Positions 12,139 through 64,000 of a stretch of DNA of 64,000 bases are shown piece by piece. How positions within the stretch are numbered: the stretch's first letter is position 1; the number at the start of each line of letters is the position of its first letter. Position numbers and translations under genes: made by a program. The DNA is taken from positions 1 to 64,000 of IMG/VR virus record IMGVR_UViG_3300042317_001568. One strand, given 5' to 3'. A model generated the notes under the pieces. The model did not search any database. It saw only the letters and a list, made by a program, of their open reading frames with translations, and was not told the origin of the DNA.

Positions 12139-12140
12139 GA

Positions 12141-15572: not shown

Positions 15573-15586
15573 AGCTATCAGCGCGT

Positions 15587-15615: not shown

Positions 15616-15805
15616 TGATTGTGCGCCAGTGATTTTTTGTTGGCGCGGGTTTGTTGACAACTGCAAAAGGACCTTGCGGTGTTTGAATTCTTTGACAACA
15701 TGTCGCTCAGCTCCTTGATGGCGTTCGCGTTAAGTACGTCATGGGTGCTTAGTTCTTTGTGTGAATTGTTCGAGGAGTAACGCTCTTTAAGAAGGGAGTC
15801 GTCCG

Positions 15806-16303: not shown

Positions 16304-16305
16304 AC

Positions 16306-16387
16306 GCTAAATAGTCTCCAAAAGCCTGACATATACAGAAAATGCGGGTTTCTGCTGAGCTAAATATTCAGCAAAAACACGGCATAT
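16306..16387 (+). promoter_or_regulatory. Tandem bipartite promoter-like motifs, copies 5 and 6
   Basis: GCTAAAT-N15-GACATAT (16306-16334) and GCTAAAT-N15-GGCATAT (16359-16387). Confidence 0.7.
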
Positions 16388-16391
16388 CTAG

Positions 16392-17070: not shown

Positions 17071-17103
17071 GTTAGTTTAACCCCTAAGAAAGGATGGACT
17101 CTC

Positions 17104-17319
17104 ATGTTGTTTATTGGAATGCTCGGTGCGGTGTTCGTGCTCGGTGCGGTTGCTGGGACCATCAGCGACATGGTCAATACCGAAAAGCCTAAAATGGCCA
17201 CCACGTTTACTCGTGTTTCGACCAAGGTCACGAGCGGTATCGTCGACGTGGACCCGAATGGCAACATCATCAGGATCACCGACGCCTCCGGGCGCGTGGT
17301 CTATGAGGAGGGGGCTTAA
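17104..17319 (+). CDS. Small membrane-anchored protein
   Basis: AAGGA RBS; N-terminal TM segment. Confidence 0.7.
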   Translation: MLFIGMLGAVFVLGAVAGTISDMVNTEKPKMATTFTRVSTKVTSGIVDVDPNGNIIRITDASGRVVYEEGA

Positions 17320-17347
17320 CGCCCTTTCTTTTAGCTATCAGCGCCCA

Positions 17348-17376
17348 CCTAAATTAAACACAAAAGCCCGTCATAT
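17348..17376 (+). promoter_or_regulatory. Bipartite promoter-like motif, copy 7
   Basis: CCTAAAT-N15-GTCATAT after a terminator and TTTAGCTATCAGCGC. Confidence 0.6.
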
Positions 17377-21119: not shown

Positions 21120-21203
21120 ATGATGTACCGAGACATACCCCGGCTAATTCGGCTCGTGATTCTTTTTGGGATACTGGTCTGGCTTGTGGGGGCGACTCTA
21201 TGA
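21120..21203 (+). CDS. Possible 27-aa TM peptide coupled to the helicase start
   Basis: MMYRDIPRLIRLVILFGILVWLVGATL; ATGA overlap. Confidence 0.35.
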   Translation: MMYRDIPRLIRLVILFGILVWLVGATL

Positions 21204-23146
21204 CCACAGCAGCAGGTATGTTCTATGGCGGCAGCGCGCTAAACAAAGCAGCCGAACTCGTACCAGACGTCCAGTTACAAGACCACCAGCAGCGCATTGC
21301 AGACCGTATCTCGGGCGATGACCCCAGACTGCTTGTGTATCACGGACTGGGCTCTGGCAAGTCCCTGTCAGCTCTGGCAGCAGCTGAGAAAGCCCGCACA
21401 GAACAGGGCGGCGAATATGGCGTCGTCGTACCAGCCAGCCTCAAGGGCAACTTCGAGAAGGAGATCGCCAAGTTCACGCGCGACTCGAACCCGGAAGTCA
21501 TGAGCTACACGGGCTTGGGCATGGGCAAGGATTTTACGAATAATCCCGACACGCTGGTGATGGACGAAGCAGCTCGGCTAAGAAATCCCACAGCCGCGAG
21601 CACATCTGCCGCTATGCGCGCAGCCCAGAAAGCCAAAAGACTGGTCCTGCTCACAGGCACGCCGATCACCAATGAGCCGAGTGATATCGCCAGCTTGCTG
21701 TCTATGCTGCACAACAAACAAATCACGCCGCAGCAATTTGATCAGCAGTTTGTAAGCGAGAAGAAAGTTCGGCCGGGTATCTTAGCGTGGTTGCGTGGCA
21801 TAAAGCCCGGTATGAAGCCAGTTATCAAGAACGAAAGCAAGCTGCGCGCATTGCTAGAGGGCAAAGTCGATTACTTACCCAGCAAAACACCTGAAGGCGT
21901 AAACGTTAACGAAGAAGTCGTGCGTGTGCCGCTGTCAGCCGAACAGCAGCGTATCCAGAAGGCTATTCGGACCAAGATTCCGCCGGGCTTTCTCTGGAAA
22001 CTGGACCAAGAGTTCCCGCTGTCGCGCGATGAGCTGGCGAAACTAAACAGCTTTATGACTGGTCTGCGCCAAGTGAGTCTAAGTACACAGCCGTTTCGAG
22101 CTGACAAAGACATGTACCGCGCGTATTCTCAGTCCAGCAAATTACAGAAAGCCATGGCAGACTTGCAGGAGACGCTCAAGAGTGATCCGCGCAAGAAGGC
22201 TATTATCTACTCTAACTTCATTGACGCTGGATTAAATCCATATGCTGCGGCGTTAGAGAAGAACAAGATTCCCCACGCGTTCTTCCACGGCGGCATGCCC
22301 GTCAAAGCGCGTCAGCAGGCACTCAAGCAGTACAACGAAGGCAAGCTCAAGGCGCTCTTGCTCGGCCCCGCAGCAGCCGAAGGTATCTCGACTAAGGGCA
22401 CCAGTCTCATTCAGCTTCTGGACCCGCACTGGAACGAAGCACGCAGTCAGCAAGCTCGTGGTCGTGGTCTGCGCTTTGACTCCCACGAGGGCCTGCCCGA
22501 AGAGCTGCGCAACGTAGCTGTCCGGCGATATCTTAGCTCGTCAGAAAATCCGGGCATTGTTGGCAAATACTTGCTGGGCAGAAAGCGTGAACGCACCGGT
22601 GACGAAGTGCTGGAAAGACTCACGGCAGAGAAAGAACAGTTTAATGACGTGTTCCGCAACTTACTCCGCGAAGTCGGCAGCGAGAAGCAAAGTGACGAAG
22701 CGCCGCCAATAGCGAAAAAAAAGAAGCCGGTACCCGCGTTCACACCTGACTTTACGCCAGAACAGCTTGAAGAACTGGGCGTCTATAACTCGCTGTACCG
22801 CGGCATTGGCCCCCGTCTGGCTAGCTTGGGCGAATGGAAACCAGAGTGGGTGAATCCTGTCGACCCCAAAGGCTGGGCGCAGTGGTACAAGCGTTATTCT
22901 GGTGGCCGGAGATTAGGCGACGAAGATGAGCGTCAAATCAAGCGCTGGGCCAATTTTAAGTCCCGTCACGGCGGCCCATTTGTTAAAAAACCCACGCCTC
23001 GCCGCGGTTGGGCGCTGCAGAACTGGGGGATTGATCCTAGCCTGCTCGTTCCCGAAGAAGAATCTGATAAAATCAAAACCATGCTGCAGAACTATGCTGT
23101 TAAACAAACGGCAAAGCATGTAGCGAATACAACGCCGGAACAGTAA
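21200..23146 (+). CDS. SF2 (SNF2-like) helicase/ATPase with an extra C-terminal domain
   Basis: HGLGSGKS, MDEAA, LLTGTP, LLDPHWN, QARGRGLR. Confidence 0.88.
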   Translation: MTTAAGMFYGGSALNKAAELVPDVQLQDHQQRIADRISGDDPRLLVYHGLGSGKSLSALAAAEKARTEQGGEYGVVVPASLKGNFEKEIAKFTRDSNPEVMSYTGLGMGKDFTNNPDTLVMDEAARLRNPTAASTSAAMRAAQKAKRLVLLTGTPITNEPSDIASLLSMLHNKQITPQQFDQQFVSEKKVRPGILAWLRGIKPGMKPVIKNESKLRALLEGKVDYLPSKTPEGVNVNEEVVRVPLSAEQQRIQKAIRTKIPPGFLWKLDQEFPLSRDELAKLNSFMTGLRQVSLSTQPFRADKDMYRAYSQSSKLQKAMADLQETLKSDPRKKAIIYSNFIDAGLNPYAAALEKNKIPHAFFHGGMPVKARQQALKQYNEGKLKALLLGPAAAEGISTKGTSLIQLLDPHWNEARSQQARGRGLRFDSHEGLPEELRNVAVRRYLSSSENPGIVGKYLLGRKRERTGDEVLERLTAEKEQFNDVFRNLLREVGSEKQSDEAPPIAKKKKPVPAFTPDFTPEQLEELGVYNSLYRGIGPRLASLGEWKPEWVNPVDPKGWAQWYKRYSGGRRLGDEDERQIKRWANFKSRHGGPFVKKPTPRRGWALQNWGIDPSLLVPEEESDKIKTMLQNYAVKQTAKHVANTTPEQ

Positions 23147-46258: not shown

Positions 46259-47092
46259 ATGCCGACATACGATCCTACGCCGTTTGGAAAAGAAATCGTA
46301 CAGAGCGGGCTTACCGGCGCAGGAGTCGGGACCTCGGCTATGGCGCTTTACTACCTTCTCAACAGACTTCGCCCCGCCGAGCTGCCCAAAACACTTTTAC
46401 AGGATCAGTCAGCCGAGAAGCTCCCGACGGCGTTAACACCGACGGAAAAAAAGAAAAAGCAGGTTAAAGACGAAGCGCTTGCTAAAACGGCAATGGGCGT
46501 AAACGACATTTACGCTAGCATCGGCAGCGCCATCCCGACGACGTTTAATCCGTTCGCCGGCAATCCCGGTTCTGGCGGCCCGGGCCTCGAAAGCCCGACA
46601 ATAGCGCACGCTGGTTGGCGTACCGCGGCCAACGTCGCTGCGCTGCTCGGCGGCCTTTATGGCGGCCGGAAGCTTGTAAACACCATGGAGTCGCACAAGA
46701 AAAAGAAGCAGCTGGCGCAAGAGGTCGAAGATGCGCGCCGACAATATTTTACGGCGCTGACAGAAAAAGAGTCGCAAGTTCTTGATGCGGTTTACGAGCA
46801 GCTTGCGGAAAAAAAGGCTGATCCTGCCGGCATCGTACAACAGCAGGTTATCGGCCCCGCGTCAGACTTCACAAAGAATTACGTCGGTATTCCGCTGTGG
46901 CGCGCGCTGCTTATGACTGGTTTAGGTACCGGCGCTCTTGGCGCGCACTACATGTATAACCGCACAAAAGACACGTCGCAGTCGCGCAACCTGCAACGCG
47001 CGCAAAAAGCTCGCGCGAGGTTAAAGTCGCTGCAGGAAACTCCGTGGGTTGACCCGGCAGAACTGGAAGCCCTATCCACCGCCGCGAAGTAA
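46259..47092 (+). CDS. Gly-zipper putative virion protein
   Basis: GAGG RBS; KTA/KKA motifs. Confidence 0.7.
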   Translation: MPTYDPTPFGKEIVQSGLTGAGVGTSAMALYYLLNRLRPAELPKTLLQDQSAEKLPTALTPTEKKKKQVKDEALAKTAMGVNDIYASIGSAIPTTFNPFAGNPGSGGPGLESPTIAHAGWRTAANVAALLGGLYGGRKLVNTMESHKKKKQLAQEVEDARRQYFTALTEKESQVLDAVYEQLAEKKADPAGIVQQQVIGPASDFTKNYVGIPLWRALLMTGLGTGALGAHYMYNRTKDTSQSRNLQRAQKARARLKSLQETPWVDPAELEALSTAAK

Positions 47093-47107: not shown

Positions 47108-50100
47108 ATGCCGAGCATTTTGCCGTCATCCGGTTTACAGCCGCCGGCACCACAACCTGCGCAGTACCGGGCATTCGGCGACGTACCGGCACTTCGAGAC
47201 AATATTTTTAACAACGCTTTGCAGAGCGCTCAAAGTATCGAGCCGATGCAAAACGATCTTTATACGCTGCGACTATCCGACGTCACTTACGACGGGCCTG
47301 AGCGGTTTACTAAAGCCGACCAGAAGAACGCTATTTTGACGCACGGCTCGCTGCACAGAAAAATGAGGGGCACATGGACTCTGCTGGACAACAAGACACA
47401 GAAGCCTGTTGCGACGAGGGCCGCTACGATTGCCAACGTGCCGTACCTAACGGACGCCGGTACGTTCGTCAATCGGGGGGTGGAGTACACGCTGGCGCAC
47501 CAACTGAGGCTGCGTCCCGGTATCTTCACACGCGAGAAAGAAAACGGGGAGCTGGAAGCCCACGTGAATGCGTTACCGGGCAAAGGCCGGTCGCACCGCT
47601 ATTATCTGGACCCAAAGACGGGGGTGTTCAAGATACAGATCGGCCAAGCGCAGATTCCGGTCATGCCGTTGTTAAAAGCGATGGGGATGCGGGACAACGA
47701 CATCCGGTCAGCGTGGGGGAACGAGATCACAGCCGCGAACATGGAGAAGGGGGACGCGGGGACGATCGACAAGTTGTACCAGCGCCTAGTGTACAAGCCG
47801 AAACCGGGGATCGACGAGCTGGGAAAGATCAAGGAGATAGCGCAGGAGTTCGCGAAGACGGAGTTCGACGAGGAAGTGACAAAAAGAACGCTCGGAAAGC
47901 CGTACAAGCAGCTGACTCCGGAAACGATCATGGACATAACGAAAAAGCTGATCGCGGTGAATCGGAAGGAGGCTGATTCCGACGACCGCGACAGCATGGC
48001 GTTCCAGCAGGTTTATGGCCCCGAAGATTTAATCGCTGAGCGTTTCGTAAAAGACAAAACTGGATTACGGCAGTTACTCTGGAAAGCAACCGCGAAAAAG
48101 TCGCTGGATCACATTCCGTCGGGCGTGTTCAACAAAGGCATTAACGCCGCCCTGATTGGCTCGGGTCTTGGTTCGTCGCTGGAAGAAATCAATCCGGCAG
48201 AAATCTTTGATCACCAGACTCGTGTAACGCGCCTAGGCGAAGGCGGCATCGGTTCGATCGACGCCATTCCCGCCGAGTCCCGCAGCGTGCAACCGAGTCA
48301 TTTCGGTTTTATCGACTATTTGCGTACGCCAGAGTCCGGCAAAGTTGGCGTCGATATGCGGTTTGCCGCCGGTGCCCGAAAAAGCCCGACAAATATTCAT
48401 ACGTTCGTGGTGCCGGTAAAAAACGTTCACACCGGCGACACGGTCTACAAGACGCCGCAAGAACTAGCCGACACGCCGCTGGTATTTCCGGGCGAAGAGC
48501 GCAGCGACCTGCCCATGGTAGCCGCTTTGCAGAACGGCAAAATTAAATACGTGCCTAAGAAAGACGCGCAGTTCATGTTGCCGAGCATGGACAACTCACT
48601 CTCCATGCTTTCAAACATGGTGCCGATGAAGTCGATGTCTAAGGGCCAGCGCGTCATCATGGGTAGCCGCATGTTTACGCAGGCACTGCCCCTAGTAAAC
48701 GCTGAATCGCCGTTTGTGCAGTCAGCAACGAGCGACGACCCGAATATTTCTTATGAAGACAAGATGGGCGAGCATCTTGGTGCCGTAAAAGCCTCCGCGC
48801 CCGGAATTGTCGAGAAAGTGACCCCCGACGAGATCATCATTAAAGGCGCAGACGGCAAACGACAGTCTATCGAGCTTTACAACGACATGCCGTTTAATCG
48901 CAAGACGTTGTGGACGCAAAGGCCGACTGTGCAGCCCGGAGATCAGATTACGCCCGGGCAATTACTCGCCACGTCGAACTTTACCGATAAAAACGGCACG
49001 ACGGCGCTGGGTTTAAATCTTCGCGTCGGGTATGTCCCTTTCCGCGGCCGTAACTATGAAGACGGCGTGGTTATCAGCGAATCAGCCGCCAAGCGCCTGA
49101 CCAGCGAGCACATGTATCAGAACGAAGTCGAGTTTGACGACAACACGCATGTCGGCAAGCGGGCGTTTGTGAGTTTGTTCCCGGGCGTTTACGACAAAAA
49201 GATGCTGGAGCGCTTTGACGACAACGGCGCAGTGAAAAAAGGCCAAGTCGTCAATTTCGGCGACCCGCTGGTGTTAATGGCCAAGAAGCGCGAAGCGGTG
49301 TACGGCAAAGTACACCGAGGCCGCGCTGGCAGCTTCGCTAACGAGACGATTACGTGGGACCATCATTCTCCCGGCGTAGTCACGGACGTTGGCGTAACAA
49401 AAAACGGTGTGAACGTAGTAGTAAAAGCGCAATCGCCGATGGAAGTCGGCGACAAGCTTTCTGGGCGATTTGGCGATAAAGGCGTTGTGGCTGAGATAGT
49501 CCCGGATCATCAGATGCCCCAAGACGCCGACGGGCGTGCGATGGAGGTGCTGGTTAGCCCGCTGGGTTTAATCAGCCGCGTAAATCCGTCTCAGGTTATC
49601 GAGGCTGCGCTGGGTAAGATTTCAGCCAAGACGGGTAAAGCATATAAGGTCAAAGATTTCGATCAGGACACAGACCTCGTTGACTTTGCGCAGGGAGAGT
49701 TAGCCAAGCACGGGCTGTCAGACACAGAAGACTTGACAGACCCGGAGACTGGTAGAAAGATTCGGGGCGTGCTGACGGGCTCCCGGTTCTACATGAAGCT
49801 CCACCATACGGCTGAATCAAAGGGTCAGGGGCGGTCTACGGGCAGTTACACAGCTGAAGGCACGCCGGCCAAGGGCGGTTCCGAAGGCGCCAAGCGCGTC
49901 GGCATGCTCGATCTTGGCGCGCTGTTAAGCCACGGTGCCGGAAAAGTTATCCGCGACGCCAAGATGGTGCGCGGCCAAGCTAATCCGGAGTATTGGGCGC
50001 AGTTCATGGCTGGCTATGACCCGCCGCTGCCCAAGGTCCCGCACGTCTACGAGAAGTTTGTCAGTCAACTGCGTGGCGCTGGCGTTAACACGGTAAAGTC

Positions 50101-51511
50101 CGGCTCCAAGGTTAATATCATGGCCCTCACCGATAAAGACATCGATGAGCTGGCCGGCGACCGAGAAATCCAGAACACTGAGACCGTGGACTGGAAAGGT
50201 AACTTAAAGCCGAAGCAGGGCGGCCTGTTTGACGAAAAGCTCACCGGCGGCCACAACGGCACGCGATGGTCAAAAGTCACGCTCCACGAGCCGATGCCCA
50301 ATCCTGTGATGGAAGAGCCCATTCGCCGCGTGCTGGGCCTTACAGAAAAGGAATTCCGCGGCGTGCTGGCCGGCGAAGAAAAGCTTTACGACAAGACAGG
50401 CCCGGCGGCTATTCGTACGGCGCTCGAAAACATCAACGTACCGAAAGCTATTGAGCAGGCTCGGCAGGATATCCAGTCTGGGCGCAAAACACTGCGTGAC
50501 GCCGCTGTCCGCCGGCTCGGGTTCTTGAAGGGCTCTGAAACCACGGGTGTTCATCCAAAAGACTGGATGCTGACCAAAATGCCGGTCCTGCCGCCAATGT
50601 TCCGGCCGGTGTCGCAAATCGGCTCCAAAAAGATGCAGCTGATCGACGACGCCAATTATCTCTACAAAGAACTGCTTGAATCTAACTCAGTGCTTAAAGA
50701 AGCTACCGGCGTGCTCGGTAACGTAGGCAACGAGCGCTTGGCCCTGTACGACGCCATGAAAGGCGTTACGGGCCTCGGCGACCCTGTAAACCCCAAACAC
50801 GTCGAAAAGAACGTCCGGGGTTATTTACGCAAGATATTCGGCGACAGCCCCAAGTTCGGCACCATGCAGCGCAAACTGCTGTCAAGCACGGTAGACCTTG
50901 TCGGCCGGGCGGTGATTACCCCCAACTCCGACCTAGACATGGACGAGGTTGCCCTGCCGGAAGAAAAGGCGTGGGATATTTACAAACCGTTTATTGTCCG
51001 CGGCCTTGTGCGTCGCGGTATGCCCCGGATGACCGCGCTCCAGTCCGTTGAAGACAAAAACAAGATCGCGTTCGACGAGATGCATAAACAAATGAATTCG
51101 CGGCCGATTGTTATTAATCGTGCCCCGGTTTTACACCGATATGGTATGATGGCCTTCTACCCCCGGCTTACGAAAAACAAGGTTATGGAGGTCAATCCGG
51201 TCATCACCAAGGGCTTTAACGCCGACTTCGACGGTGACGCGATGCAGTATCACGTCCCCAGTACCGAAGAGGCGGCCAAAGAGGCAATTGAGAAAATGCT
51301 GCCCAGCAAAAATCTGTTTGCGGCGGCTTCTTTCAAGGCGCACTACATGCCGACGATGGATTACCACACAGGCATCTATCTCGCGTCGAGTCGCATTAAC
51401 TCTAAAGCTAAGCCCCGTGTTTACCGAAATAAGAAAGACGCCGTCCGCGCGTATCGTGCCGGCGAAATTGATGTGGACACGCCGGTACACATCGTGGAAG
51501 ATAAAGACTGA
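47108..51511 (+). CDS. rpoBC: Phage multisubunit RNA polymerase: full beta fused to the N-terminal part of beta' (contains the catalytic site)
   Basis: Beta motifs VPYLTDAGTF, GSRMFTQALPL, GRNYEDGVVIS, GDKLSGRFGDKGVV, YMKLHH. Beta' motifs VLPPMFRP, KLLSSTVDLVGRAVI, NRAPVLHR, NADFDGD. Confidence 0.95.
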   Translation: MPSILPSSGLQPPAPQPAQYRAFGDVPALRDNIFNNALQSAQSIEPMQNDLYTLRLSDVTYDGPERFTKADQKNAILTHGSLHRKMRGTWTLLDNKTQKPVATRAATIANVPYLTDAGTFVNRGVEYTLAHQLRLRPGIFTREKENGELEAHVNALPGKGRSHRYYLDPKTGVFKIQIGQAQIPVMPLLKAMGMRDNDIRSAWGNEITAANMEKGDAGTIDKLYQRLVYKPKPGIDELGKIKEIAQEFAKTEFDEEVTKRTLGKPYKQLTPETIMDITKKLIAVNRKEADSDDRDSMAFQQVYGPEDLIAERFVKDKTGLRQLLWKATAKKSLDHIPSGVFNKGINAALIGSGLGSSLEEINPAEIFDHQTRVTRLGEGGIGSIDAIPAESRSVQPSHFGFIDYLRTPESGKVGVDMRFAAGARKSPTNIHTFVVPVKNVHTGDTVYKTPQELADTPLVFPGEERSDLPMVAALQNGKIKYVPKKDAQFMLPSMDNSLSMLSNMVPMKSMSKGQRVIMGSRMFTQALPLVNAESPFVQSATSDDPNISYEDKMGEHLGAVKASAPGIVEKVTPDEIIIKGADGKRQSIELYNDMPFNRKTLWTQRPTVQPGDQITPGQLLATSNFTDKNGTTALGLNLRVGYVPFRGRNYEDGVVISESAAKRLTSEHMYQNEVEFDDNTHVGKRAFVSLFPGVYDKKMLERFDDNGAVKKGQVVNFGDPLVLMAKKREAVYGKVHRGRAGSFANETITWDHHSPGVVTDVGVTKNGVNVVVKAQSPMEVGDKLSGRFGDKGVVAEIVPDHQMPQDADGRAMEVLVSPLGLISRVNPSQVIEAALGKISAKTGKAYKVKDFDQDTDLVDFAQGELAKHGLSDTEDLTDPETGRKIRGVLTGSRFYMKLHHTAESKGQGRSTGSYTAEGTPAKGGSEGAKRVGMLDLGALLSHGAGKVIRDAKMVRGQANPEYWAQFMAGYDPPLPKVPHVYEKFVSQLRGAGVNTVKSGSKVNIMALTDKDIDELAGDREIQNTETVDWKGNLKPKQGGLFDEKLTGGHNGTRWSKVTLHEPMPNPVMEEPIRRVLGLTEKEFRGVLAGEEKLYDKTGPAAIRTALENINVPKAIEQARQDIQSGRKTLRDAAVRRLGFLKGSETTGVHPKDWMLTKMPVLPPMFRPVSQIGSKKMQLIDDANYLYKELLESNSVLKEATGVLGNVGNERLALYDAMKGVTGLGDPVNPKHVEKNVRGYLRKIFGDSPKFGTMQRKLLSSTVDLVGRAVITPNSDLDMDEVALPEEKAWDIYKPFIVRGLVRRGMPRMTALQSVEDKNKIAFDEMHKQMNSRPIVINRAPVLHRYGMMAFYPRLTKNKVMEVNPVITKGFNADFDGDAMQYHVPSTEEAAKEAIEKMLPSKNLFAAASFKAHYMPTMDYHTGIYLASSRINSKAKPRVYRNKKDAVRAYRAGEIDVDTPVHIVEDKD

Positions 51512-51526
51512 TTTCGGAGGCAAAAA

Positions 51527-52258
51527 ATGTACACAGTAAATCCTGAACTCTTTCGACTCGCGCAACAAAAGCTATTTGAAAAGTCCGCGGTAGTTCCCGG
51601 ACAAATGGCGATGCCGCCACAAGACCCGGCGGCTATGGGCGCAGTGCCTCCAGCGGGCCCAATGGACCCGTCACAGCAGATGGGCGCAGCTCCTCCCGCA
51701 GGTGGAGACCCGTCGGCGGCTATGGCCAGCATGGCCCCGCCGATGGACCCGACAGCTTCTATGCAGCAACCTCCGGCAGCGCCAGCCCCGACAGCGCAGC
51801 CGCAGCAGAAGCTAAAACCAGAACAGATGATGCAGATGCTCGATTATCGGCTGTATAACATGCAGCAGCAGCTCACGGCAATTATGAATGCCATGGGTGT
51901 CGAAGTCGCGCCTGAATCTCTCGTTTTGCCGCCGGGCACAACAGGTGCTCCCCCTGCTGAAGCTGCGTTACCGGGTGGTCCCATGGCGCCCCCGCCTCCC
52001 GCGCAAGATCAAGCAGGCGGTCCGATGCCCCCCGGCGGCCCTGTACCTCCCGGCGGCCCTATGCCGCCGAATGCGCCACCAGCCGATGACGGCGCGCCCA
52101 AAACAGCGCAATGGTGGCAGACGGAGCACACCGCACAGAGAATTGGCCGCCCCACCGCACAAGGCGACAATCTTGACGTTAACAGCCCGACACCGATGCA
52201 AACAAAAGCAGGTGCGATCGCCGCCCTTTGCCGGAATTTGCTGAATAATGATCATTGA
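51527..52258 (+). CDS. Pro/Ala/Met/Gln-rich, largely disordered protein
   Basis: GGAGG RBS; composition; EKSA/PKTA motifs. Confidence 0.75.
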   Translation: MYTVNPELFRLAQQKLFEKSAVVPGQMAMPPQDPAAMGAVPPAGPMDPSQQMGAAPPAGGDPSAAMASMAPPMDPTASMQQPPAAPAPTAQPQQKLKPEQMMQMLDYRLYNMQQQLTAIMNAMGVEVAPESLVLPPGTTGAPPAEAALPGGPMAPPPPAQDQAGGPMPPGGPVPPGGPMPPNAPPADDGAPKTAQWWQTEHTAQRIGRPTAQGDNLDVNSPTPMQTKAGAIAALCRNLLNNDH

Positions 52259-52466
52259 GTCCCAACACGCGCTTATCCCTAACAAGATAGCCGCGCACAA
52301 TGTTGTAATACGCGACGATGCCGGTAACGCCATATTCGCAGCTATTCACTTTGCAGACAGCATCGTGTATTCGGCGATCGGCAATAAAGATTTTGCATCC
52401 GTGCTCAGACTCATCGTGGACGAAGCACCGCCAAAAGTAACAGAATTTCCGCCCGTTAAAAAATAG
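52248..52466 (+). CDS. Hypothetical protein
   Basis: Fills the gap between genes. Confidence 0.6.
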   Translation: MIIESQHALIPNKIAAHNVVIRDDAGNAIFAAIHFADSIVYSAIGNKDFASVLRLIVDEAPPKVTEFPPVKK

Positions 52467-52473
52467 GTGCCGT

Positions 52474-54384
52474 ATGCTGAAAACGACACTCGGGCAAATC
52501 ATGATCAACGACGCGCTACCGCAGGAGATGCGGGACTACAATCGCGTCATGGATAAGAAGACGCTGAGCTCGTTATCGACCGAGCTCGCCAAGAATTATC
52601 CCGAACAGTACCGCGAAGTTACCAAGAAGCTGTTCGATGTTGGGCGAGACGCCTCCTACTCAACAGGCGGTTTGACGTTCTCCCTGCGAGACATCAAACA
52701 AACGCTCGCCGGTCAGCGGGCTAAGCTGGAAGTGCGAAAGCAGCTTCGCGGCATTATGGCCACGCCGGGCTTGTCTGAAAAAGACCGCAACTTAAAAATC
52801 CTCCAGCTGGCGGCGAACACGCAAAACAAGCTGCTTGAAGAAGTTTTTAACGAGGCGCAAGATCAAGACAACCCGCTCGCGACCCAAGTCAAATCGGCTA
52901 TTCGCGGCAATAAGTACAGTCTTAGCTCACTTATTGGCGCCGACATGCTTTACGTCGACCACAAGGACGAGCCGATTCCGATCCCCGTTCTTAACAACTA
53001 TGGTAGGGGTCTTACACCCGCAGAATATTTCGCGGGCGCCTTCGGCGCCCGCAAGGGTCTAATTGACACGAAGACAGCCACGGCTGACGCCGGGTTCTAC
53101 GGCAAGCAATTGACGCAAATGGCGCACCGATTACTGGTGACGGCTGACGACGAAGACGACGACGCGCACAAGGACGCTTTAGAAGTCAGAGGGTTCCCAA
53201 CCGATGTCGATGACGCCGACAATGAGGGCGCGCTTCTTGCCCGCGGTGCGGGCCCCTATAAACGAAATACAGTGCTGACGCCAAAAATCCTAAAAGACCT
53301 GAAACAGATGGGCGTAAAGGACATCCTTGTTCGTAGTCCATTGGTCGGCGGCCCCGGCGATGGCGGCGTGTTCGGTAAGGACGTCGGCTACCGCGAAAAG
53401 GGCCGCATTCCTCCAATTGGCGACTATGTCGGTATTGCCGCCGCCCAAGCGTTAAGCGAGCCGGTGTCGCAGTCGCAATTGTCGTCAAAGCACTCCGGCG
53501 GTGTTGGTGGCGCGCGGGCCATTGGCGGCTTCAAAGCTATTAACGCGCTGGTGCAGGTTCCCAAAACTTATCCTGACGGCGCGACACACGCGCAGCGCGA
53601 CGGAGCGGTTCAAGAAGTACGCCCCGCGGCTCAGGGCGGCTTTTACGTGCGCGTTGACGGAGAAGATCATTACATCCGCGCCGATCAAAACGTGTCTGTC
53701 AAAAAGGGCGACCCGATCGAAGCCGGCGACGTGCTTTCGGACGGCATGCCCAACCCGTCTGAGGTCGTACGGCATAAAGGCGTCGGCGAGGGGCGTCGGT
53801 ACTTCGTGGGCGCCATGCGTGACGTGTTAAAAAATAGCGGCATTACACCGCACCGACGAAACATCGAACTGGTGGCCCGCGGGCTGATCAATCATGTGCG
53901 GTTAACTGACGAATACGGCAGTTACGCCCCAGATGACGTCGTGCCGTATTCGACGTTAGAGCGCGACTGGCAGCCGAGAGAAGGCGCTGTCTCTGGCGCG
54001 CCCTCTTCGTTAAAGGGGCATTACTTGGAAAAACCGGTGCTGCACTACTCGGTCGGCACAAAGATTGGTAAGGGCGTAATTGACAATATGAGCCGCTACG
54101 GAATTAACAACGTGCAGGCCCACAGAAACCCGCCGCCGTTCCAGCCAGAAATGGTCCGCGGCATGGCGAACATTTCCAACGACCCGGACTGGATGACGCG
54201 CATGCTTGGCTCCTACCAAGAACGCGGATTCTTAAACAGCGTGCACCGGGGACTAAAAAGCGACACAAGCGGCAGTAGTTATGTGCCGGCCCTTGCCCGC
54301 GGCGAACAATTCGGGCTTTCTGGCCCCACAAGCGGCTGGAATCCGGCAACAACTAGGATAGACAGCCAAAACACTGTAAATTAG
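52474..54384 (+). CDS. rpoC: Phage RNA polymerase beta' C-terminal part
   Basis: KTTLG, bridge helix GARKGLIDT..TADAG, trigger loop IAAAQALSEP...KHSGG, RRNIELVAR. Confidence 0.92.
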   Translation: MLKTTLGQIMINDALPQEMRDYNRVMDKKTLSSLSTELAKNYPEQYREVTKKLFDVGRDASYSTGGLTFSLRDIKQTLAGQRAKLEVRKQLRGIMATPGLSEKDRNLKILQLAANTQNKLLEEVFNEAQDQDNPLATQVKSAIRGNKYSLSSLIGADMLYVDHKDEPIPIPVLNNYGRGLTPAEYFAGAFGARKGLIDTKTATADAGFYGKQLTQMAHRLLVTADDEDDDAHKDALEVRGFPTDVDDADNEGALLARGAGPYKRNTVLTPKILKDLKQMGVKDILVRSPLVGGPGDGGVFGKDVGYREKGRIPPIGDYVGIAAAQALSEPVSQSQLSSKHSGGVGGARAIGGFKAINALVQVPKTYPDGATHAQRDGAVQEVRPAAQGGFYVRVDGEDHYIRADQNVSVKKGDPIEAGDVLSDGMPNPSEVVRHKGVGEGRRYFVGAMRDVLKNSGITPHRRNIELVARGLINHVRLTDEYGSYAPDDVVPYSTLERDWQPREGAVSGAPSSLKGHYLEKPVLHYSVGTKIGKGVIDNMSRYGINNVQAHRNPPPFQPEMVRGMANISNDPDWMTRMLGSYQERGFLNSVHRGLKSDTSGSSYVPALARGEQFGLSGPTSGWNPATTRIDSQNTVN

Positions 54385-54422
54385 AGTACCGAGTTTCGAC
54401 CAATTGCCGCATGGAGGTGGCT

Positions 54423-56792
54423 GTGTACAACAAACGAGAAAAAAAGGCGTCAGTGCCCCAACTGCTGAAAATTGTGCGTAGTTTTGACCGCACAAACACG
54501 AAAACAGCGGCGATCGGCGGTCACGGCGACGACACATCGTTCGAGCAGGCTTTTTCGAATCTGGCGCATGCTTATTTGCGCGATTCTGCGCCGAAACTCC
54601 TTGACCACGAGGTTGGTTTCCAGCTTCTTGACCGAAACCGCGAAAATACCAAAGCAGTCGGCGTTTTTGCGTTTAAAGTCGGCTCAAATTGGATGTACGC
54701 CCCGGTTTTCTTTTTAAATGGCGATCTTAAGGGTCACGAGCTGCTGTATCTGAAAAATCAGGACATGTTCGTGCCGCTCAAAGAAAACTGGATTAATTAT
54801 TTACTCAACCGCAAGCCGAGCATTCTGGGCAGCGGTATTCAACGAAATTTAACGTCTCTCGGCCAACGGCAGCCTGACTTTACACAGCTTTCCCGTTCGC
54901 CCGCAAAGTTTGGTTCCGCGCAACCGACGCTCAAGGAAATGATGGCGTCCGTTATGCCGACGTTTGCCCGCACGGCGACGATGAACACCAAAGAGGCATT
55001 TGAACAGCTTGGGAAGTCTCTCCATCTGGGCACGTTTTTAAAGCAAGCGCGACTCGAAACGGTCGAAATGCTTGTGAAGCTCTGTCAGCATGCTCCGCAA
55101 GTCGCGGAGGCTCTCGACGAGTTTCACGGGCTAAATATCGTTAAAGAAGCGATTGCCGAAATCAAGGAACGTGACCGGCTGAGCAAAATTAGCAGCGTGC
55201 TGACGAAAAAGGCCGAGAAGCCGGAAGCGCAGGGCACGTTGCAGGTCATCACGTACGACCTCACGGTGCAAAAGGCTTTACCGCCAGAATACACCGAAGA
55301 AGATCAAGAAAAACTGCTTCGGGACGGCGTGCTGATTAAAGACCAGCGGGACCGCGACGCTGTGTCCATTCCGTACAACATTCAAGTCTCGCAGAAGTTC
55401 TTCAACCCGACCGAAAGCGGTCTCTACGAAGTGTTAGTCAAGCCCGGTGAGATTGAGCGGTGCTACATCGCCGTCCACCCAATGGGTCCCAGCAAGCGCG
55501 CTGACTTTGCCACTGTAGTGCGCATTGACGGTAAACCGGACTGGCTGAATACGCGACCTGATCATATTTTTTGTTTAGCGCACGTCGAAGGCGACGAGTT
55601 CGATTCTTGGTACAACGCGCTCCCTGACGCCAACAGCGTTGGTAAGGATGCGCGGTACATGGTGCTTAACAAAAACGGAGATACGTCCGTACCGTTCCGC
55701 GTGCTCAAAGAGCACGGCGAAAATTCGTACGGGACGACGACCTATGAGGTCCACATGGAAGATCATTCAAAATTTCCTCCGCGTGGAAGCATTGGCCCGT
55801 GCTGCTACTCAGACCCGTTGAATTACGACAAGTACCGCGACGGGGTCCGCGTCCATCTGAACGGTAAGAAGGGCGCTGGCTTGCGTTCCAGCATGGGCGA
55901 CATTTTCGTTCCAGAGAGTTTCAAGCTGTTAAAAGTCAGCAAGGGCGAAGATGACGACGAATTAGACGGGCAAGATACCTGCGGCTGCGGCGAAAGCGAC
56001 CCGCCAGCCCTGCAGCCCGGCAACCTGCTTGATGTGCAGTCTGTGCTTATGAACAAGCTCGGCAGCCTTGAAGTCCGGCATAACGGCTCTGACGTCTGGA
56101 TTAACAACGAGCAATTTACAACAAAGAGCGCGCTGATCTCACTGGTAAAACAGCACGGCCTGCGCGAGGCAGCCGCCCGCGAGATTCTTAGCAAAGCAGC
56201 CGCACAGCGTAAATTCGCGTGCCACGTCAAATATGCCGACCCGTACGGCGGCCCGATGATGATTCACGGCGCCCCGACTGCTCCGGCTGATCCGGGACCG
56301 GTTATGGGCGGCGAAAGCATTATGGGGACGAACATTCCAACGCAGCTTGGCATTGACGTTGGCGTTCCGGTGCCGGGCATGAGCGCGACCCAAACAGACC
56401 GCAGCGTTTACAACCCCAACACCCAGTTCGACCAAAAGGCCGTGCAGCAGGTACTCGACGCCGCCCAGTCTGGTCAGCGTGAAGTGTTTGATACGGCCAT
56501 GATCGGCACCATGTTGCGCGCCGTCCGAGACGACGGCCTTGTCGACCGGTACATGGGCGACCTGACAAAGGGTCTGGATAAGATCGGCCGTATTTTGTTT
56601 ATGTTTTACTGGCACGGTGACCGCTTTGCCGATCGTTACGGTAAGTCGGACATGCCCGAACTAGAAGACTCGTTGCGCAATGCTTTTGAAATGCTCGGCG
56701 ACGTTATTCTGTTCTTGAAGCAAAAAACAATCGAGCCGTACCCCGAAGAGTCATCGCAGGACGTCGACTTGAACGCGCCTGCTAACGTATAG
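54423..56792 (+). CDS. Large putative virion/head-morphogenesis protein
   Basis: GTG start after GGAGG; located in the head module; function not assigned. Confidence 0.75.
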   Translation: MYNKREKKASVPQLLKIVRSFDRTNTKTAAIGGHGDDTSFEQAFSNLAHAYLRDSAPKLLDHEVGFQLLDRNRENTKAVGVFAFKVGSNWMYAPVFFLNGDLKGHELLYLKNQDMFVPLKENWINYLLNRKPSILGSGIQRNLTSLGQRQPDFTQLSRSPAKFGSAQPTLKEMMASVMPTFARTATMNTKEAFEQLGKSLHLGTFLKQARLETVEMLVKLCQHAPQVAEALDEFHGLNIVKEAIAEIKERDRLSKISSVLTKKAEKPEAQGTLQVITYDLTVQKALPPEYTEEDQEKLLRDGVLIKDQRDRDAVSIPYNIQVSQKFFNPTESGLYEVLVKPGEIERCYIAVHPMGPSKRADFATVVRIDGKPDWLNTRPDHIFCLAHVEGDEFDSWYNALPDANSVGKDARYMVLNKNGDTSVPFRVLKEHGENSYGTTTYEVHMEDHSKFPPRGSIGPCCYSDPLNYDKYRDGVRVHLNGKKGAGLRSSMGDIFVPESFKLLKVSKGEDDDELDGQDTCGCGESDPPALQPGNLLDVQSVLMNKLGSLEVRHNGSDVWINNEQFTTKSALISLVKQHGLREAAAREILSKAAAQRKFACHVKYADPYGGPMMIHGAPTAPADPGPVMGGESIMGTNIPTQLGIDVGVPVPGMSATQTDRSVYNPNTQFDQKAVQQVLDAAQSGQREVFDTAMIGTMLRAVRDDGLVDRYMGDLTKGLDKIGRILFMFYWHGDRFADRYGKSDMPELEDSLRNAFEMLGDVILFLKQKTIEPYPEESSQDVDLNAPANV

Positions 56793-59702: not shown

Positions 59703-61181
59703 ATGAGCATGATTAAAGTAATTCAGCCGCACGCACAAAACTTTAGCGAGCCCGTAGCCGCGCTCATCAAAGTATCTAGCCGCGGAATAATCGGGTCTGA
59801 TCGGTCAGCGCTGATTAAACGTGCCGGCGCTGAGTTCGTAGATCATTTGGCCAACATCAAGTTTGCCGCGGATGAGGTGCCTGTGCATCTTATCGCCATC
59901 GGCGCCACCGAGGATTACGGCCCGAACCGCAACGGAGACGGTTTCACGCGTGACTGCTGCAAGAAGTATCACCACACGTTTGAAAAGTTTGCGCGGTTCT
60001 ATCGGGATCACGCCAACAAGAATCCGGCAAAAAGCTACGGGCTTGTAAAGGCGTCGTTTTACAACGAACCAATGCGCCGAATCGAACTGGTATGCGCTTT
60101 AAATAGCACCAAAGAAGCAGCAGAGCGTAACGGCGGTTTAGTGGCCGACAAAGAACTAGAGAAGCTGTCGAACGACCAAGAGATTCCAGTTTCGATGGCG
60201 TGCAAAATTCCATTCGACAAGTGTTCGTCGTGCGGCAACATGGCCCGCACCCGCGCCGAGTACTGCGACTCGATTGAGAATGGCGGTCACTGCAAAGCTG
60301 GCGGTTTGAAACACAACATCGGTCGGGTAATGTCTGACGGTCACATCCTGCACGCCGACAACCCTGACCCTTCGTTCTTTGATATTTCGCATGTGTTTCG
60401 TCCGGCTGACCGCATCGCGTACGTTTCCGGACAACTGCAAAAAGCTGCCTCAAGTGCCGGCTGTATGTCTGGCGCAGAGTTAGCTGAGCAAATGGGTGTA
60501 ACGCTCCCCGTATCGCTCTTAACCAACGAATTTACTAGTAAGCGGGCGCAGGCGCAGTTACAGGCTTTACAGTTACTCGCTGACACGGAGCGCACCCTGA
60601 ACCTGCGTGATCTTACGAAAGCGGCCGCGTACACCCCAACCGGTCTCTCCGCAGCCATTCAGCAGCCGATTGATTTTGAAAGCGCCCCGATTGTCGGCTC
60701 CGTTAAGCTTGCAGAGTTGCTGCGCGGCTTGGCTGACGCGGCGGTTGTCTTACCCGTGCGCGACTTCTTGATGTTAACAATTAAACAAGCTGATTTTGGG
60801 CTCGTGAACGCGGTATCATCTGCGACAATTAGCATTTTTGACCGGCTGTTGAACGAGCCAAATATTGCATCTACACTTGAAAATAACGTATACTTTCCGG
60901 CAGACGCAGCTCCGCCGGCCGTGCGTTTATGGGCCGAAAAAGTGGCGTGCACTTACAGCGTACTAGAAGATCGTATGCAAAAACAGGCTTATACAGCGGC
61001 ATTGCGCGGTGCAACGCCGCGTCATCTTGTAGAGAAGACTGCATCGGCAACGCCAGCGATAAATGCTCTTGCAAAGCACTACGCTCTCTATAAGATTGCT
61101 GCATTAACGGCAGTCACTGAGAAATATGGAAATAACTTGTTGACAGTAGGCCACTGCATACTGCAAAATTACATTACTTGA
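59703..61181 (+). CDS. Prohead (maturation) protease-like protein
   Basis: GPNRNGDGF, RDH (His), VSMAC (Ser), FFDIS-x-V-x-x-PAD; position upstream of the scaffold and capsid genes. Confidence 0.7.
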   Translation: MSMIKVIQPHAQNFSEPVAALIKVSSRGIIGSDRSALIKRAGAEFVDHLANIKFAADEVPVHLIAIGATEDYGPNRNGDGFTRDCCKKYHHTFEKFARFYRDHANKNPAKSYGLVKASFYNEPMRRIELVCALNSTKEAAERNGGLVADKELEKLSNDQEIPVSMACKIPFDKCSSCGNMARTRAEYCDSIENGGHCKAGGLKHNIGRVMSDGHILHADNPDPSFFDISHVFRPADRIAYVSGQLQKAASSAGCMSGAELAEQMGVTLPVSLLTNEFTSKRAQAQLQALQLLADTERTLNLRDLTKAAAYTPTGLSAAIQQPIDFESAPIVGSVKLAELLRGLADAAVVLPVRDFLMLTIKQADFGLVNAVSSATISIFDRLLNEPNIASTLENNVYFPADAAPPAVRLWAEKVACTYSVLEDRMQKQAYTAALRGATPRHLVEKTASATPAINALAKHYALYKIAALTAVTEKYGNNLLTVGHCILQNYIT

Positions 61182-63718: not shown

Positions 63719-64000
63719 ATGCCCACTCAGCAAGAAATCCAACTGCTCAACGAGACTCTTTTTGAGCAGCTTGATACACCCGGCATGCAGAAGCAGGCCA
63801 TTGATGCGGTTAACGACTTCACGCGCACCAAGATGCGTGAAGACGGCTTCTACCGTCGTATTATCCCGCCGCTAACCATCACCAACGACGAACTCGATCG
63901 TCAGGTTGATACGGACAAGCCGGTGAAGGTAGTCGACAAGGAGCCCGATTCCCCGGCAGCCGTGTCGATTCCGTTCGCCACGCTCCCGAGCAACTTTTAC
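63719..64000 (+). CDS. Probable major capsid protein (3'-truncated, not in the track)
   Basis: GGAGGT RBS; open frame MPTQQEIQLLNETLFEQLDTPGMQKQAIDAVNDFTRTKMREDGFYRRIIPP...; gene order protease-scaffold-decoration-capsid. Confidence 0.6.
   Translation, partial: MPTQQEIQLLNETLFEQLDTPGMQKQAIDAVNDFTRTKMREDGFYRRIIPPLTITNDELDRQVDTDKPVKVVDKEPDSPAAVSIPFATLPSNFY

What the first reader, a model, noticed from the sequence alone, without database searches (positions are those of the whole stretch)
47108..54384. Multisubunit RNA polymerase with unusual architecture: beta fused to beta'-N, beta'-C separate, zinc sites lost
Seen: one 1467-aa chain carries all beta motifs and runs into beta' up to just past NADFDGD. 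The bridge helix and trigger loop are in a 636-aa gene starting MLKTTLG. The beta' zinc finger is deleted (GGLFDEKLTGGHNGTRW), and the C-terminal zinc cysteines are replaced (RSPLVGGPGDGG). No alpha or sigma is visible. Known: Helicobacter and Wolbachia fuse full beta-beta'; cyanobacterial RpoC1/C2 split just after the TTxG motif, whereas here the split is just before it; phiKZ-like RNAPs are split differently. The genes lie among virion genes, suggesting a packaged enzyme that may read the SCTAAAT-N15-GNYATAT motif.
Basis: partly seen in the sequence, partly recalled or inferred. Interest (0 to 1): 0.8.

Follow-up and report, generated by a model that had tools for sequence, protein, structure and literature searches.

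The report
Two-chain, cysteine-free phage RNA polymerase
A 205-kb lake-water phage encodes a bacterial-type RNA polymerase built from only two chains (beta fused to the first half of beta', and the second half of beta' as a separate gene) with no cysteine and no zinc site; the phage also has its own sigma factor elsewhere in the genome, and the design is common in metagenomes but I found no paper describing it.

Summary
Window 47108-51511 encodes a 1467-aa chain: a complete beta joined head-to-tail to beta' up to ~90 aa past NADFDGD. Window 52474-54384 encodes the rest of beta' (bridge helix, trigger loop, region H). The N-terminal beta' zinc ribbon is deleted and the four cysteines of the second zinc site are gone. 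Both chains (2103 aa) have no cysteine at all.

It is not an artefact. Identical DNA occurs in independent lake metagenomes from 2016-2024. At least 150 clusters at 50% identity share the fusion. Cultured Salmonella phage Arash and Vibrio phage D69 share the fusion, the zinc-ribbon deletion and the split site.

"No sigma or alpha" holds only for the 64-kb window. I scanned the rest of the 205-kb genome and found one sigma70-family gene (267 aa, ~88.5 kb). It is the homologue of Arash gp10, which was detected in virions. I also found a free-standing alpha-CTD-like gene (~120.9 kb). There is no alpha-NTD, omega or second polymerase.

Best reading: a sigma-dependent, two-chain phage RNA polymerase, probably packaged in the virion. 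Packaging rests on Arash virion proteomics, head-module synteny and the lack of cysteine. The link to the promoter-like motif is untested. I found no paper describing the architecture: a new variant of a known kind.

The parts
47108..50107 (+). Beta part of the fused chain (residues 1 to ~1000). It lacks the E. coli lineage-specific insertions SI1 and SI2. The catalytic motif GDKLSGRFGDKGVV is at 49448-49489.
   Evidence: Pfam Rpb2_2/_3/_6. PDB beta hits with E = 5e-72. MAFFT aligns it to E. coli beta up to residue 1336 of 1342.
50108..51511 (+). Beta' N-terminal half of the same chain (residues ~1001-1467), corresponding to E. coli beta' ~18-570. The zinc ribbon is deleted at 50219-50269. The clamp helices are retained. 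NADFDGD is at 51218-51238. The stop codon is at 51509-51511.
   Evidence: Pfam Rpb1_1/_2. PDB beta' residues 144-548. Alignments. Motif coordinates.
51527..52258 (+). Intervening 243-aa ORF rich in Pro, Ala, Gln and Met, of low complexity. It is syntenic in relatives but only 41-57% identical. It has no family match and its function is unknown.
   Evidence: Metatranscriptome contigs of a ~94%-identical strain cover it, with in-frame indels.
52474..54384 (+). Beta' C-terminal half (636 aa), starting at the TTxG motif. Bridge helix 53026-53112. Former second zinc site without any cysteine 53329-53391. Trigger loop without SI3 53431-53556. Region H 54211-54264.
   Evidence: Pfam Rpb1_5 with E = 4.9e-25. 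PDB beta' hits with E = 2.6e-40. Alignments.
46259..47092 (+). Upstream 277-aa ORF with no cysteine. It ends 16 nt before the fused gene and is syntenic in relatives at 31-37% identity. Function unknown.
54411..56792 (+). Downstream 793-aa ORF, about 70% conserved and syntenic in relatives. It is a weak homologue of Arash gp218, which was detected in Arash virions.
21200..23146 (+). Helicase (648 aa, no cysteine), 35% identical to Arash gp217. In Arash, gp217 sits next to the beta'-C gene and was detected in virions. It is a possible partner of the polymerase.
59703..61181 (+). A 492-aa homologue of Arash gp222, a virion protein. It marks the head module.
63719..64000 (+). Start of the major capsid protein gene, a homologue of Arash gp226. 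The gene is cut off by the end of the window.
   Evidence: L019 10626-11552 matches Arash 150711-151595 with E = 2e-33. L019 is 100% identical to window 53094-64000.
4368..17376 (+). Seven promoter-like sites with the form GCTAAAT-N6-CAAA(A/T)-N4-GGCATAT, at 4368, 12110, 14947, 15587, 16306, 16359 and 17348. They are candidate targets of the phage holoenzyme; this link is not tested.
   Evidence: Four more sites lie elsewhere in the genome, all on the + strand.

Best explanation
These two genes encode the catalytic core of a phage-encoded, bacterial-type multisubunit RNA polymerase reduced to two polypeptides.

Chain 1 is a complete beta joined directly to beta' residues ~18-570. That part of beta' includes the clamp helices, the lid and rudder region, and the NADFDGD magnesium site. 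Chain 2 is the rest of beta': bridge helix, a trigger loop without insertion, jaw and region H. I infer that the covalent beta-beta' link takes over the job of the alpha dimer, which normally brings beta and beta' together, because the genome has no alpha N-terminal domain and no omega.

I infer that promoter recognition comes from a phage sigma70-family protein. It is 267 aa, carries regions 3 and 4 and a degenerate region 2, and is encoded in the baseplate module about 36 kb downstream of the polymerase genes, outside the window. A free-standing alpha-CTD-like protein (143 aa) may add upstream DNA or activator contacts.

The enzyme, its sigma and a helicase are probably packaged into the virion and delivered with the DNA to transcribe early genes. 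The complete absence of cysteine and zinc sites fits a protein that must unfold, leave the capsid and refold.

Shown: the architecture, conservation of the active-site elements, loss of the zinc sites, the wide distribution, and the presence of the sigma and alpha-CTD-like genes. Inferred: assembly without alpha, use of the phage sigma, packaging, and which promoters are read.
For: Architecture and motifs.

Real and conserved:
- Identical protein on three IMG/VR contigs.
- A neighbouring gene of this genome (window 63094-63687) is indexed in 47 blocks of the assembly collection, 10 of them with contigs over 200 kb.
- Lake DNA runs from 2016 and 2020 match the stretch with 0-1 differences across the junction and across the gap between the two genes.
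- The same five-gene block occurs in relatives at 70-75% identity.
- More than 120 clusters at 90% identity and at least 150 clusters at 50% identity span the beta/beta' junction.
- In a tree, the fused forms separate from unsplit E. coli, Rhizobium phage TM30 and Vibrio phage Va2 beta' with 100/98 support.

Sigma:
- L023 18252-19055 scores Sigma70_r3 at 40.3 bits and Sigma70_r4 at 24.3 bits, both above the Pfam cut-offs.
- BLASTP against Arash gp10 gives E = 6e-18.
- PDB SigA and RpoS hits cover residues 74-255.
- It lies on the same record as L019, which is 100% identical to the window.

Alpha-CTD-like protein: E = 7e-11 to bacterial alpha residues 246-314.

Nothing else found: no alpha-NTD, omega, second sigma or second polymerase across the 205 kb.

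Packaging:
- In Arash virion mass spectrometry, gp206 is the most detected protein (3516 spectra). gp216, sigma gp10 and helicase gp217 are also present, while the second sigma gp196 is not listed in the part of the virion table I read (PMC10585845).
- The polymerase genes are syntenic with the Arash head module, and the capsid gene lies 9 kb downstream.
- There are no cysteines in 2103 aa, nor in the sigma or the helicase, against 1.7% in the rest of the window. 110 of 113 close relatives also have none.
Against: - No experiment exists for this phage. Packaging is extrapolated from a relative whose polymerase is only 32% identical.
- The Arash 'virion' list has 116 proteins, including ribonucleotide reductase and RNA ligases, so carry-over of abundant infection proteins is possible. 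The authors say so themselves.
- The sigma lacks the aromatic residues of region 2.3-2.4 that melt the -10 element, so how it opens promoters is unclear.
- Trigger-loop residues next to the conserved histidine differ from the bacterial ones (LSSKH against MRTFH).
- The precomputed Pfam annotations used for 64-178 kb could miss a very divergent factor.
- The cysteine-free argument is an inference, not an established rule.
- The RNA evidence comes from contigs of a related strain in one metatranscriptome and could be carried-over DNA.
Confidence: 0.7

Rival explanations
1. The polymerase is not packaged. Host RNA polymerase reads the early genes. The phage enzyme, made after infection, transcribes middle or late genes together with the phage sigma.
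For: The Arash virion proteome contains many metabolic enzymes, which suggests contamination by abundant infection proteins. The polymerase and sigma genes sit in late-looking structural modules. None of the promoter-like motif sites found in the sequence I could search lies directly upstream of the polymerase or sigma genes.
Against: In Arash, gp206 is the single most detected protein and gp216 is among the top five, ahead of or close to the capsid protein. Only one of the two Arash sigmas is listed in the part of the virion table I read. Genes placed in a structural module and expressed late are what a packaged enzyme would need. The cysteine-free state is shared by the polymerase, the sigma and the helicase.
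Confidence: 0.25
2. The phage sigma redirects host core RNA polymerase, as T4 gp55 or SPO1 gp28 do. The phage core then works without sigma, or with an unrecognised factor such as the neighbouring 277-aa, 243-aa or 793-aa proteins.
For: Known phage multisubunit polymerases (phiKZ, AR9) use factors that are not sigma70 by sequence (PMC7598289, PMC13282480). Three conserved ORFs of unknown function flank the polymerase genes. The beta' residue equivalent to E. coli R275 in the sigma-binding clamp helix is not conserved (read from the alignment).
Against: The beta' clamp coiled-coil and a flap-tip-like segment are retained. In Arash the orthologous sigma is found with the polymerase in virions. 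Atlas searches gave nothing sigma-like for the 277-aa and 793-aa neighbours.
Confidence: 0.15
3. The fusion or the split is an assembly, frameshift or chimera artefact.
For: None found.
Against: The locus is 100% identical in independent assemblies and samples. A whole gene lies between the two halves. The same fusion point and split point occur in cultured phages that have different intervening genes. Hundreds of metagenomic relatives share the architecture.
Confidence: 0.01

Closest known systems
RNA polymerase of Salmonella phage Arash (gp206 + gp216) and Vibrio phages D69, D181 and D148
   Same: Beta is fused to beta'-N. The split lies at the same place before the TTxG motif. The N-terminal zinc ribbon is deleted in the same way. 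There is a homologous sigma (gp10), a homologous helicase (gp217), and the same position in the head module.
   Different: Identity is only 31-32%. Arash and D69 keep all four cysteines of the second zinc site; the window clade has none. Arash has a second sigma (gp196) and nine genes between the two halves. The Arash paper annotates the genes simply as beta and beta' and does not mention the architecture.
Cyanobacterial and plastid RNA polymerase (beta' split into RpoC1/gamma and RpoC2)
   Same: Beta' is broken at almost the same surface loop, within about 18 residues.
   Different: In cyanobacteria the N-terminal half is a free subunit, not fused to beta. RpoC2 carries a very large trigger-loop insertion. 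Alpha, omega and both zinc sites are present (established knowledge).
Fused beta-beta' (RpoBC) of Helicobacter and Wolbachia
   Same: Head-to-tail covalent link from the C-terminus of beta to the N-terminus of beta'.
   Different: There the whole of beta' is fused, giving about 2900 aa, and alpha, omega and the zinc sites are kept (established knowledge). Here only the first ~40% of beta' is fused.
Other phage bacterial-type polymerases with unsplit beta' (Rhizobium phage RHph_TM30, Vibrio phage Va2; PHROGs 24349 and 25354; probably the mReC group of Weinheimer & Aylward 2020)
   Same: They are phage-encoded beta and beta' recognisable with the cellular profiles.
   Different: Beta' is one chain of 1127-1192 aa and is not fused to beta. 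The N-terminal zinc ribbon is retained. They separate from the fused forms in the tree.
Virion and non-virion polymerases of phiKZ and AR9 jumbo phages
   Same: They are phage multisubunit polymerases without alpha or omega. One version is packaged in the virion. Beta' is split in two.
   Different: In those phages beta is also split, into two or three pieces, and nothing is fused. There are two paralogous enzymes per genome, no sigma70-family gene, and far greater divergence from the bacterial enzymes (PMC7824862).

Membership tests
Bacterial-type multisubunit RNA polymerase (two double-psi beta-barrel core) | Beta barrel with the catalytic lysines, and beta' barrel with NADFDGD | tested here: met
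   Rpb2_6 E = 7e-51 and Rpb1_2 E = 1.9e-26. GDKLSGRFGDKGVV and NADFDGD are present.
Bacterial-type multisubunit RNA polymerase (two double-psi beta-barrel core) | Bridge helix and trigger loop | tested here: met
   Rpb1_5. The alignment to E. coli residues 769-805 and 913-942/1130-1146 includes the conserved histidine. Neighbouring trigger-loop residues differ.
Bacterial-type multisubunit RNA polymerase (two double-psi beta-barrel core) | Alpha dimer (N-terminal domain) and omega as assembly subunits | tested here: not met
   No RNA_pol_A_bac, RNA_pol_L or Rpb6 hit anywhere in the 205 kb. Only a free alpha-CTD-like domain was found.
Bacterial-type multisubunit RNA polymerase (two double-psi beta-barrel core) | Two zinc sites in beta' | tested here: not met
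   The zinc ribbon is deleted and the second site has no cysteine. There are no cysteines in either chain.
Bacterial-type multisubunit RNA polymerase (two double-psi beta-barrel core) | Sigma70-family initiation factor | tested here: inconclusive
   The gene is present in the genome. Binding to this core is not testable with these tools.
Arash-like fused/split phage RNA polymerase | Beta fused to beta'-N, split before TTxG, N-terminal zinc ribbon deleted | tested here: met
   Alignments. Tree bipartition with 100/98 support.
Arash-like fused/split phage RNA polymerase | Second zinc site (CX73CX6CX2C) retained | tested here: not met
   Arash and D69 keep 4 cysteines. The window and its relatives in L012, L013, L016 and L018 have none.
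Arash-like fused/split phage RNA polymerase | Presence of both chains in purified virions | not testable with these tools
   Shown only for Arash, by mass spectrometry (PMC10585845).
mReC (Weinheimer & Aylward 2020) | Contig belongs to the 97 published mReC contigs, or clusters with them | tested here: inconclusive
   The metagenome ids of the window and its IMG/VR relatives are absent from the supplementary files, one of which was truncated when stored. The paper mentions neither a fusion nor a split in mReC. No mReC sequence was available to place in a tree.
phiKZ/AR9-type phage polymerases | Beta split into two or three chains, two paralogous enzymes, no sigma70 homologue | tested here: not met
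   There is a single enzyme, its beta is intact and fused, and a sigma70-family gene is present (genome scan).
Cyanobacterial-type split beta' | Free gamma subunit plus RpoC2 with a large trigger-loop insertion | tested here: not met
   The split site is nearly the same, but the N-terminal half is fused to beta and the trigger loop has no insertion.

The most novel reading that the evidence does not exclude
This lineage is a minimal, zinc-free and cysteine-free bacterial-type holoenzyme made of two core chains plus a sigma70-family factor. It is packaged in the capsid and ejected with the DNA. That would make it the first sigma70-dependent virion RNA polymerase. It would also be a natural case of a cellular-type core assembling without the alpha N-terminal domain, omega or structural zinc. 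The lineage is abundant in lakes and other waters.
Probability: 0.35. Interest if true: 0.8.

Novelty: new variant of a known kind. Interest (0 to 1): 0.62.

Why it matters
Phage multisubunit RNA polymerases studied so far (phiKZ, AR9, crAss-like, P23-45) are far removed from the bacterial enzyme and do not use sigma70-family factors. This lineage is easily recognised as bacterial-type but has been re-engineered by evolution:
- beta is tethered to the first half of beta';
- beta' is broken at nearly the same place as in cyanobacteria;
- both zinc sites and every cysteine have been removed;
- there is no alpha N-terminal domain and no omega;
- a sigma and a free alpha-CTD-like protein are retained.

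It therefore offers a natural test of what the alpha dimer, omega and the structural zinc ions are needed for. It is also a compact two-gene bacterial-type polymerase for biochemistry and structural work, and a possible new early-transcription strategy based on a packaged holoenzyme. Cultured relatives (Arash on Salmonella, D69 on Vibrio) make the ideas testable at once. The family is large (at least 150 clusters at 50% identity) and rich in inteins, so it also matters for annotating aquatic viromes, where such proteins are labelled only 'RNA polymerase beta subunit'.

Tried and rejected
- **Nucleotide search of the phage collection:** no match. Only protein-level relatives exist.
- **Neighbours of the polymerase genes:** PHROGs and Pfam named almost nothing, so the "virion genes" context could not be confirmed directly. 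It came only from homology to Arash proteins.
- **Sigma inside the window:** phmmer with the Arash sigmas and with the newly found sigma gave nothing.
- **Specificity factor among the neighbours:** Atlas searches of the 277-aa and 793-aa ORFs gave nothing useful. The stored model of the 277-aa ORF has pTM 0.21.
- **mReC membership:** no id match in the supplements.
- **Literature:** searches for a description of the architecture covered mReC, Iyer et al. 2021, the 2026 jumbo phage review, the moraphage paper and the boreal jumbophage paper. None describes it. Moraphages lack polymerase genes altogether.
- **Structure prediction:** not run. The fused chain exceeds the 1200-aa limit and no multimer tool is available.
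- **Rejected readings:** bacterial contamination was rejected because the genes sit in a 205-kb phage genome with terminase, capsid and baseplate genes. The artefact reading was also rejected.

Full report
**Where the window comes from.** The window is the first 64 kb of IMG/VR contig IMGVR_UViG_3300042317_001568, which is 205,010 bp long (the same record appears as jgi Ga0453210_0000004). It is a lake-water phage: 23 lake or freshwater DNA runs from 2016-2024 hold the stretch. Nearly all genes are on the + strand.

**Check of the observation.** The ORFs are as stated.
- The 1467-aa product of 47108-51511 carries the beta domains Rpb2_2, Rpb2_3 and Rpb2_6, followed by the beta' domains Rpb1_1 and Rpb1_2.
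- Against solved structures, residues 91-1028 match bacterial beta (best E = 5e-72) and residues 1070-1465 match beta' residues ~144-548.
- In MAFFT alignments, beta homology runs to E. coli beta residue 1336 of 1342 and passes within a few residues into beta' at about residue 18. This is a direct head-to-tail fusion at about residue 1000, window ~50105.
- The E. coli insertions SI1 and SI2 are absent.
- NADFDGD lies at residues 1371-1377, and the chain ends about 90 residues later.
- The 636-aa product of 52474-54384 has Rpb1_5 and aligns to beta' from the TTVGR motif (E. coli ~572) onward. The bridge helix, a trigger loop without SI3 and region H are present.
- Residue 23 of this protein aligns to residue 5 of cyanobacterial RpoC2 (8h3v_B).

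**Zinc sites and cysteine.** The N-terminal zinc ribbon of beta' (E. coli C70, C72, C85, C88) is deleted and replaced by TGGHNG. The second site (C814, C888, C895, C898) has no cysteine. 110 of 113 close relatives of the fused chain also have none.

**Not an artefact.**
- The fused protein is identical on three IMG/VR contigs from different metagenomes.
- A neighbouring gene of the same genome (window 63094-63687) is indexed in 47 blocks of the assembly collection, ten of which hold contigs over 200 kb.
- Contigs from three lake DNA runs (2016, 2020) lie on 49000-54900 with 0-1 differences across both the fusion point and the gap between the genes.
- A whole 243-aa gene separates the two halves.
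- The five-gene block (277-aa ORF, fused gene, 243-aa ORF, beta'-C, 793-aa ORF) is kept in relatives that are 70-75% identical.

**How widespread it is.**
- A word-indexed search gave more than 120 clusters at 90% identity, 74-94% identical to the query and about 1460 aa long, on contigs up to 212 kb.
- An exhaustive HMMER search was run with residues 700-1467, which span the junction. All 150 best representatives (clusters at 50% identity) were 44-59% identical to the query, and the full-length ones without inserts match it as a single stretch across the junction.
- Many of these are 1800-3350 aa long with two to five matched stretches. This indicates inteins. One cluster carries the Pfam intein and LAGLIDADG domains (P0098), and loci L016-L018 have a 1-kb insert at residue ~410-427.
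- In the phage collection, the same architecture is found in Salmonella phage Arash (gp206 1525 aa, gp216 606 aa) and in Vibrio phages D69, D181 and D148, at 31-32% identity.
- These share the fusion, the zinc-ribbon deletion and the split point, but keep the four cysteines of the second zinc site.
- Other phages (Rhizobium phage RHph_TM30, Vibrio phage Va2) have an unsplit, unfused beta' of 1127-1192 aa that keeps the zinc ribbon.
- In a maximum-likelihood tree of the beta'-N region, the 50 fused forms separate from E. coli, TM30 and Va2 with 100/98 support. Arash + D69 are sister to the metagenomic clade that holds the window. Few outgroups were used and the root is not determined.

**Sigma and alpha.** No sigma, alpha or omega family was found inside the window. 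This rests on Pfam scans of 62 ORFs, individual scans and phmmer with the Arash sigmas. Arash has two sigma genes, so I walked along the rest of the genome.
- *64-178 kb:* covered with loci that carry precomputed Pfam hits.
- *178-205 kb:* covered with IMG/VR loci that I scanned myself.
- *Same genome:* the first locus is 100% identical to window 53094-64000.

Two relevant genes turned up.
1. A 267-aa sigma70-family protein at about 88.5 kb, next to a Baseplate_J-like gene.
   - Sigma70_r3 scores 40.3 bits and Sigma70_r4 scores 24.3 bits, both above the Pfam cut-offs.
   - BLASTP against Arash gp10 gives E = 6e-18.
   - PDB SigA and RpoS hits cover residues 74-255.
   - It has no cysteine.
2. 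A 143-aa protein at about 120.9 kb whose C-terminal 70 residues match the bacterial alpha C-terminal domain (E = 7e-11).

No alpha N-terminal domain, omega, second sigma or second polymerase was seen.

**Virion context.** Profile searches do not name the neighbours. Homology to Arash does help.
- 54411-56792 matches gp218.
- 59703-61181 matches gp222.
- The capsid gene (gp226 homologue) starts at window ~63719.
- 21200-23146 is 35% identical to helicase gp217.

In the Arash paper, virion mass spectrometry found gp206 to be the most detected protein (3516 spectra). gp216 had 1210 spectra. Sigma gp10 and helicase gp217 were also present. The second sigma gp196 does not appear in the part of the table I read (PMC10585845). 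The authors note that carry-over of abundant proteins is possible. In the lake phage, the four homologues of these virion-detected proteins are exactly the ones without cysteine.

**The promoter-like motif.** SCTAAAT-N15-GNYATAT occurs seven times in the window against 0 expected. All sites are on the + strand, between 4368 and 17376, and intergenic. A third conserved box, CAAA(A/T), lies in the spacer. Four more sites lie elsewhere in the genome. The two outer boxes are spaced like the -35 and -10 elements of a sigma70-type promoter, but they do not resemble the host consensus. This fits recognition by the phage sigma but does not show it.

**RNA.** One freshwater metatranscriptome holds contigs about 94% identical to parts of the stretch. 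Depth is highest over the 3' end of the fused gene and over the 243-aa ORF, where the indels are in frame. This is a related strain, and carried-over DNA cannot be excluded.

**Mechanism proposed.** The core has two chains, and the covalent link between beta and beta' replaces the assembly role of the alpha dimer. Artificially fused E. coli beta-beta', and E. coli beta' split at the chloroplast site, are functional; this is established knowledge from work of Severinov and colleagues, which I did not re-read here. Initiation would use the phage sigma. The alpha-CTD-like protein is a possible accessory. The core, sigma and helicase are probably packaged and ejected for early transcription. The loss of zinc sites and cysteine would then be an adaptation to unfolding and transit.

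**Comparison and novelty.** The enzyme works like a bacterial holoenzyme and is a clear homologue of one. It fails three defining features of the canonical enzyme: alpha-NTD and omega, both zinc sites, and separate beta and beta' chains. It is not of the phiKZ/AR9 type. It belongs with the Arash-like enzymes but differs from them in having lost the second zinc site. I found no paper that describes this architecture. The Arash paper labels the genes beta and beta'. I therefore rate it a new variant of a known kind. It is of real interest to transcription and phage biologists, but it rests on sequence evidence only.

Noticed in passing
window 47108-51511 and 52474-54384: Both polymerase chains have no cysteine in 2103 aa. 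So do the helicase at 21200-23146, the ORFs at 25506-26390, 39577-40560, 46259-47092 and 58131-59690, and the sigma outside the window. The first two ORFs of the window are the opposite: 13-1011 has 9.6% cysteine and 1021-1881 has 5.6% with an HYR_4C domain.
   Followed up: partly
L027 12516-12947 (about 120.9 kb of the same genome, outside the window): A free-standing 143-aa protein with a bacterial alpha-subunit C-terminal domain (E = 7e-11) behind a Thr/Ala/Lys-rich N-terminus. No alpha N-terminal domain occurs anywhere in the genome.
   Followed up: partly
L016, L017 and L018 (insert at residue ~410-427 of the fused gene); proteins P0019, P0098 and P0121-P0270: Relatives of the fused gene are full of inteins. 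Lengths reach 3350 aa, with up to five matched stretches. Inserts sit at conserved motifs, and some lie within or right next to the catalytic aspartate motif (for example NADFDG-NC...). Vibrio phages D181 and D148 have a homing endonuclease inside the gene.
   Followed up: partly
P0121-P0270: Most distant relatives carry GADFDGD instead of NADFDGD at the catalytic site.
   Followed up: no
window 5531-10269 and 33382-33454: Seven tRNA genes (Lys, Leu x2, Val, Ile, Glu, Asn) and a tmRNA gene (tag peptide GAHAPALAA) are encoded by the phage.
   Followed up: no
window 35508-36542: A 344-aa actin-like protein gives a full-length match to Pfam Volactin (E = 5.5e-61), an archaeal actin family. It also gives weak matches to Salactin and MreB.
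   Followed up: no
window 37893-39311 and another ORF of the window: 'Swiss Army Knife' RNA-repair domains are present: 2H-SAK and DUF5661 in 37893-39311, and HAD_SAK_2 and cREC_REC in an ORF I did not pin down.
   Followed up: no
window 41347-42198: A matrixin-type (M10) zinc metallopeptidase with a weak peptidoglycan-binding domain match (below the Pfam cut-off). It may act on the cell wall.
   Followed up: no
window 51527-52258: The 243-aa Pro/Ala/Gln/Met-rich ORF between the polymerase genes evolves fast (41-57% identity in relatives). It has the highest depth in the one metatranscriptome that holds a related strain. Function unknown.
   Followed up: partly
window 4368-17376; L019 13599 and 14371; L027 2650; L033 17355: The promoter-like motif has three parts, GCTAAAT-N6-CAAA(A/T)-N4-GGCATAT. 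Several sites have no ORF directly downstream, and hairpin-like sequence follows some of them. Three sites share an upstream box TTTAGCTATCAGCGC.
   Followed up: partly
L027 5176-5394 and L025 16010-21979 (same genome, outside the window): The phage encodes a CsrA homologue (72 aa) and a 1989-aa collagen-repeat protein. Further collagen-repeat and laminin-G proteins lie at 178-205 kb.
   Followed up: no
window 1892-2590, 3247-4362, 30003-30701, 31353-32297: Auxiliary genes: thymidine kinase, two glycosyltransferases and a PhoH-like ATPase.
   Followed up: no
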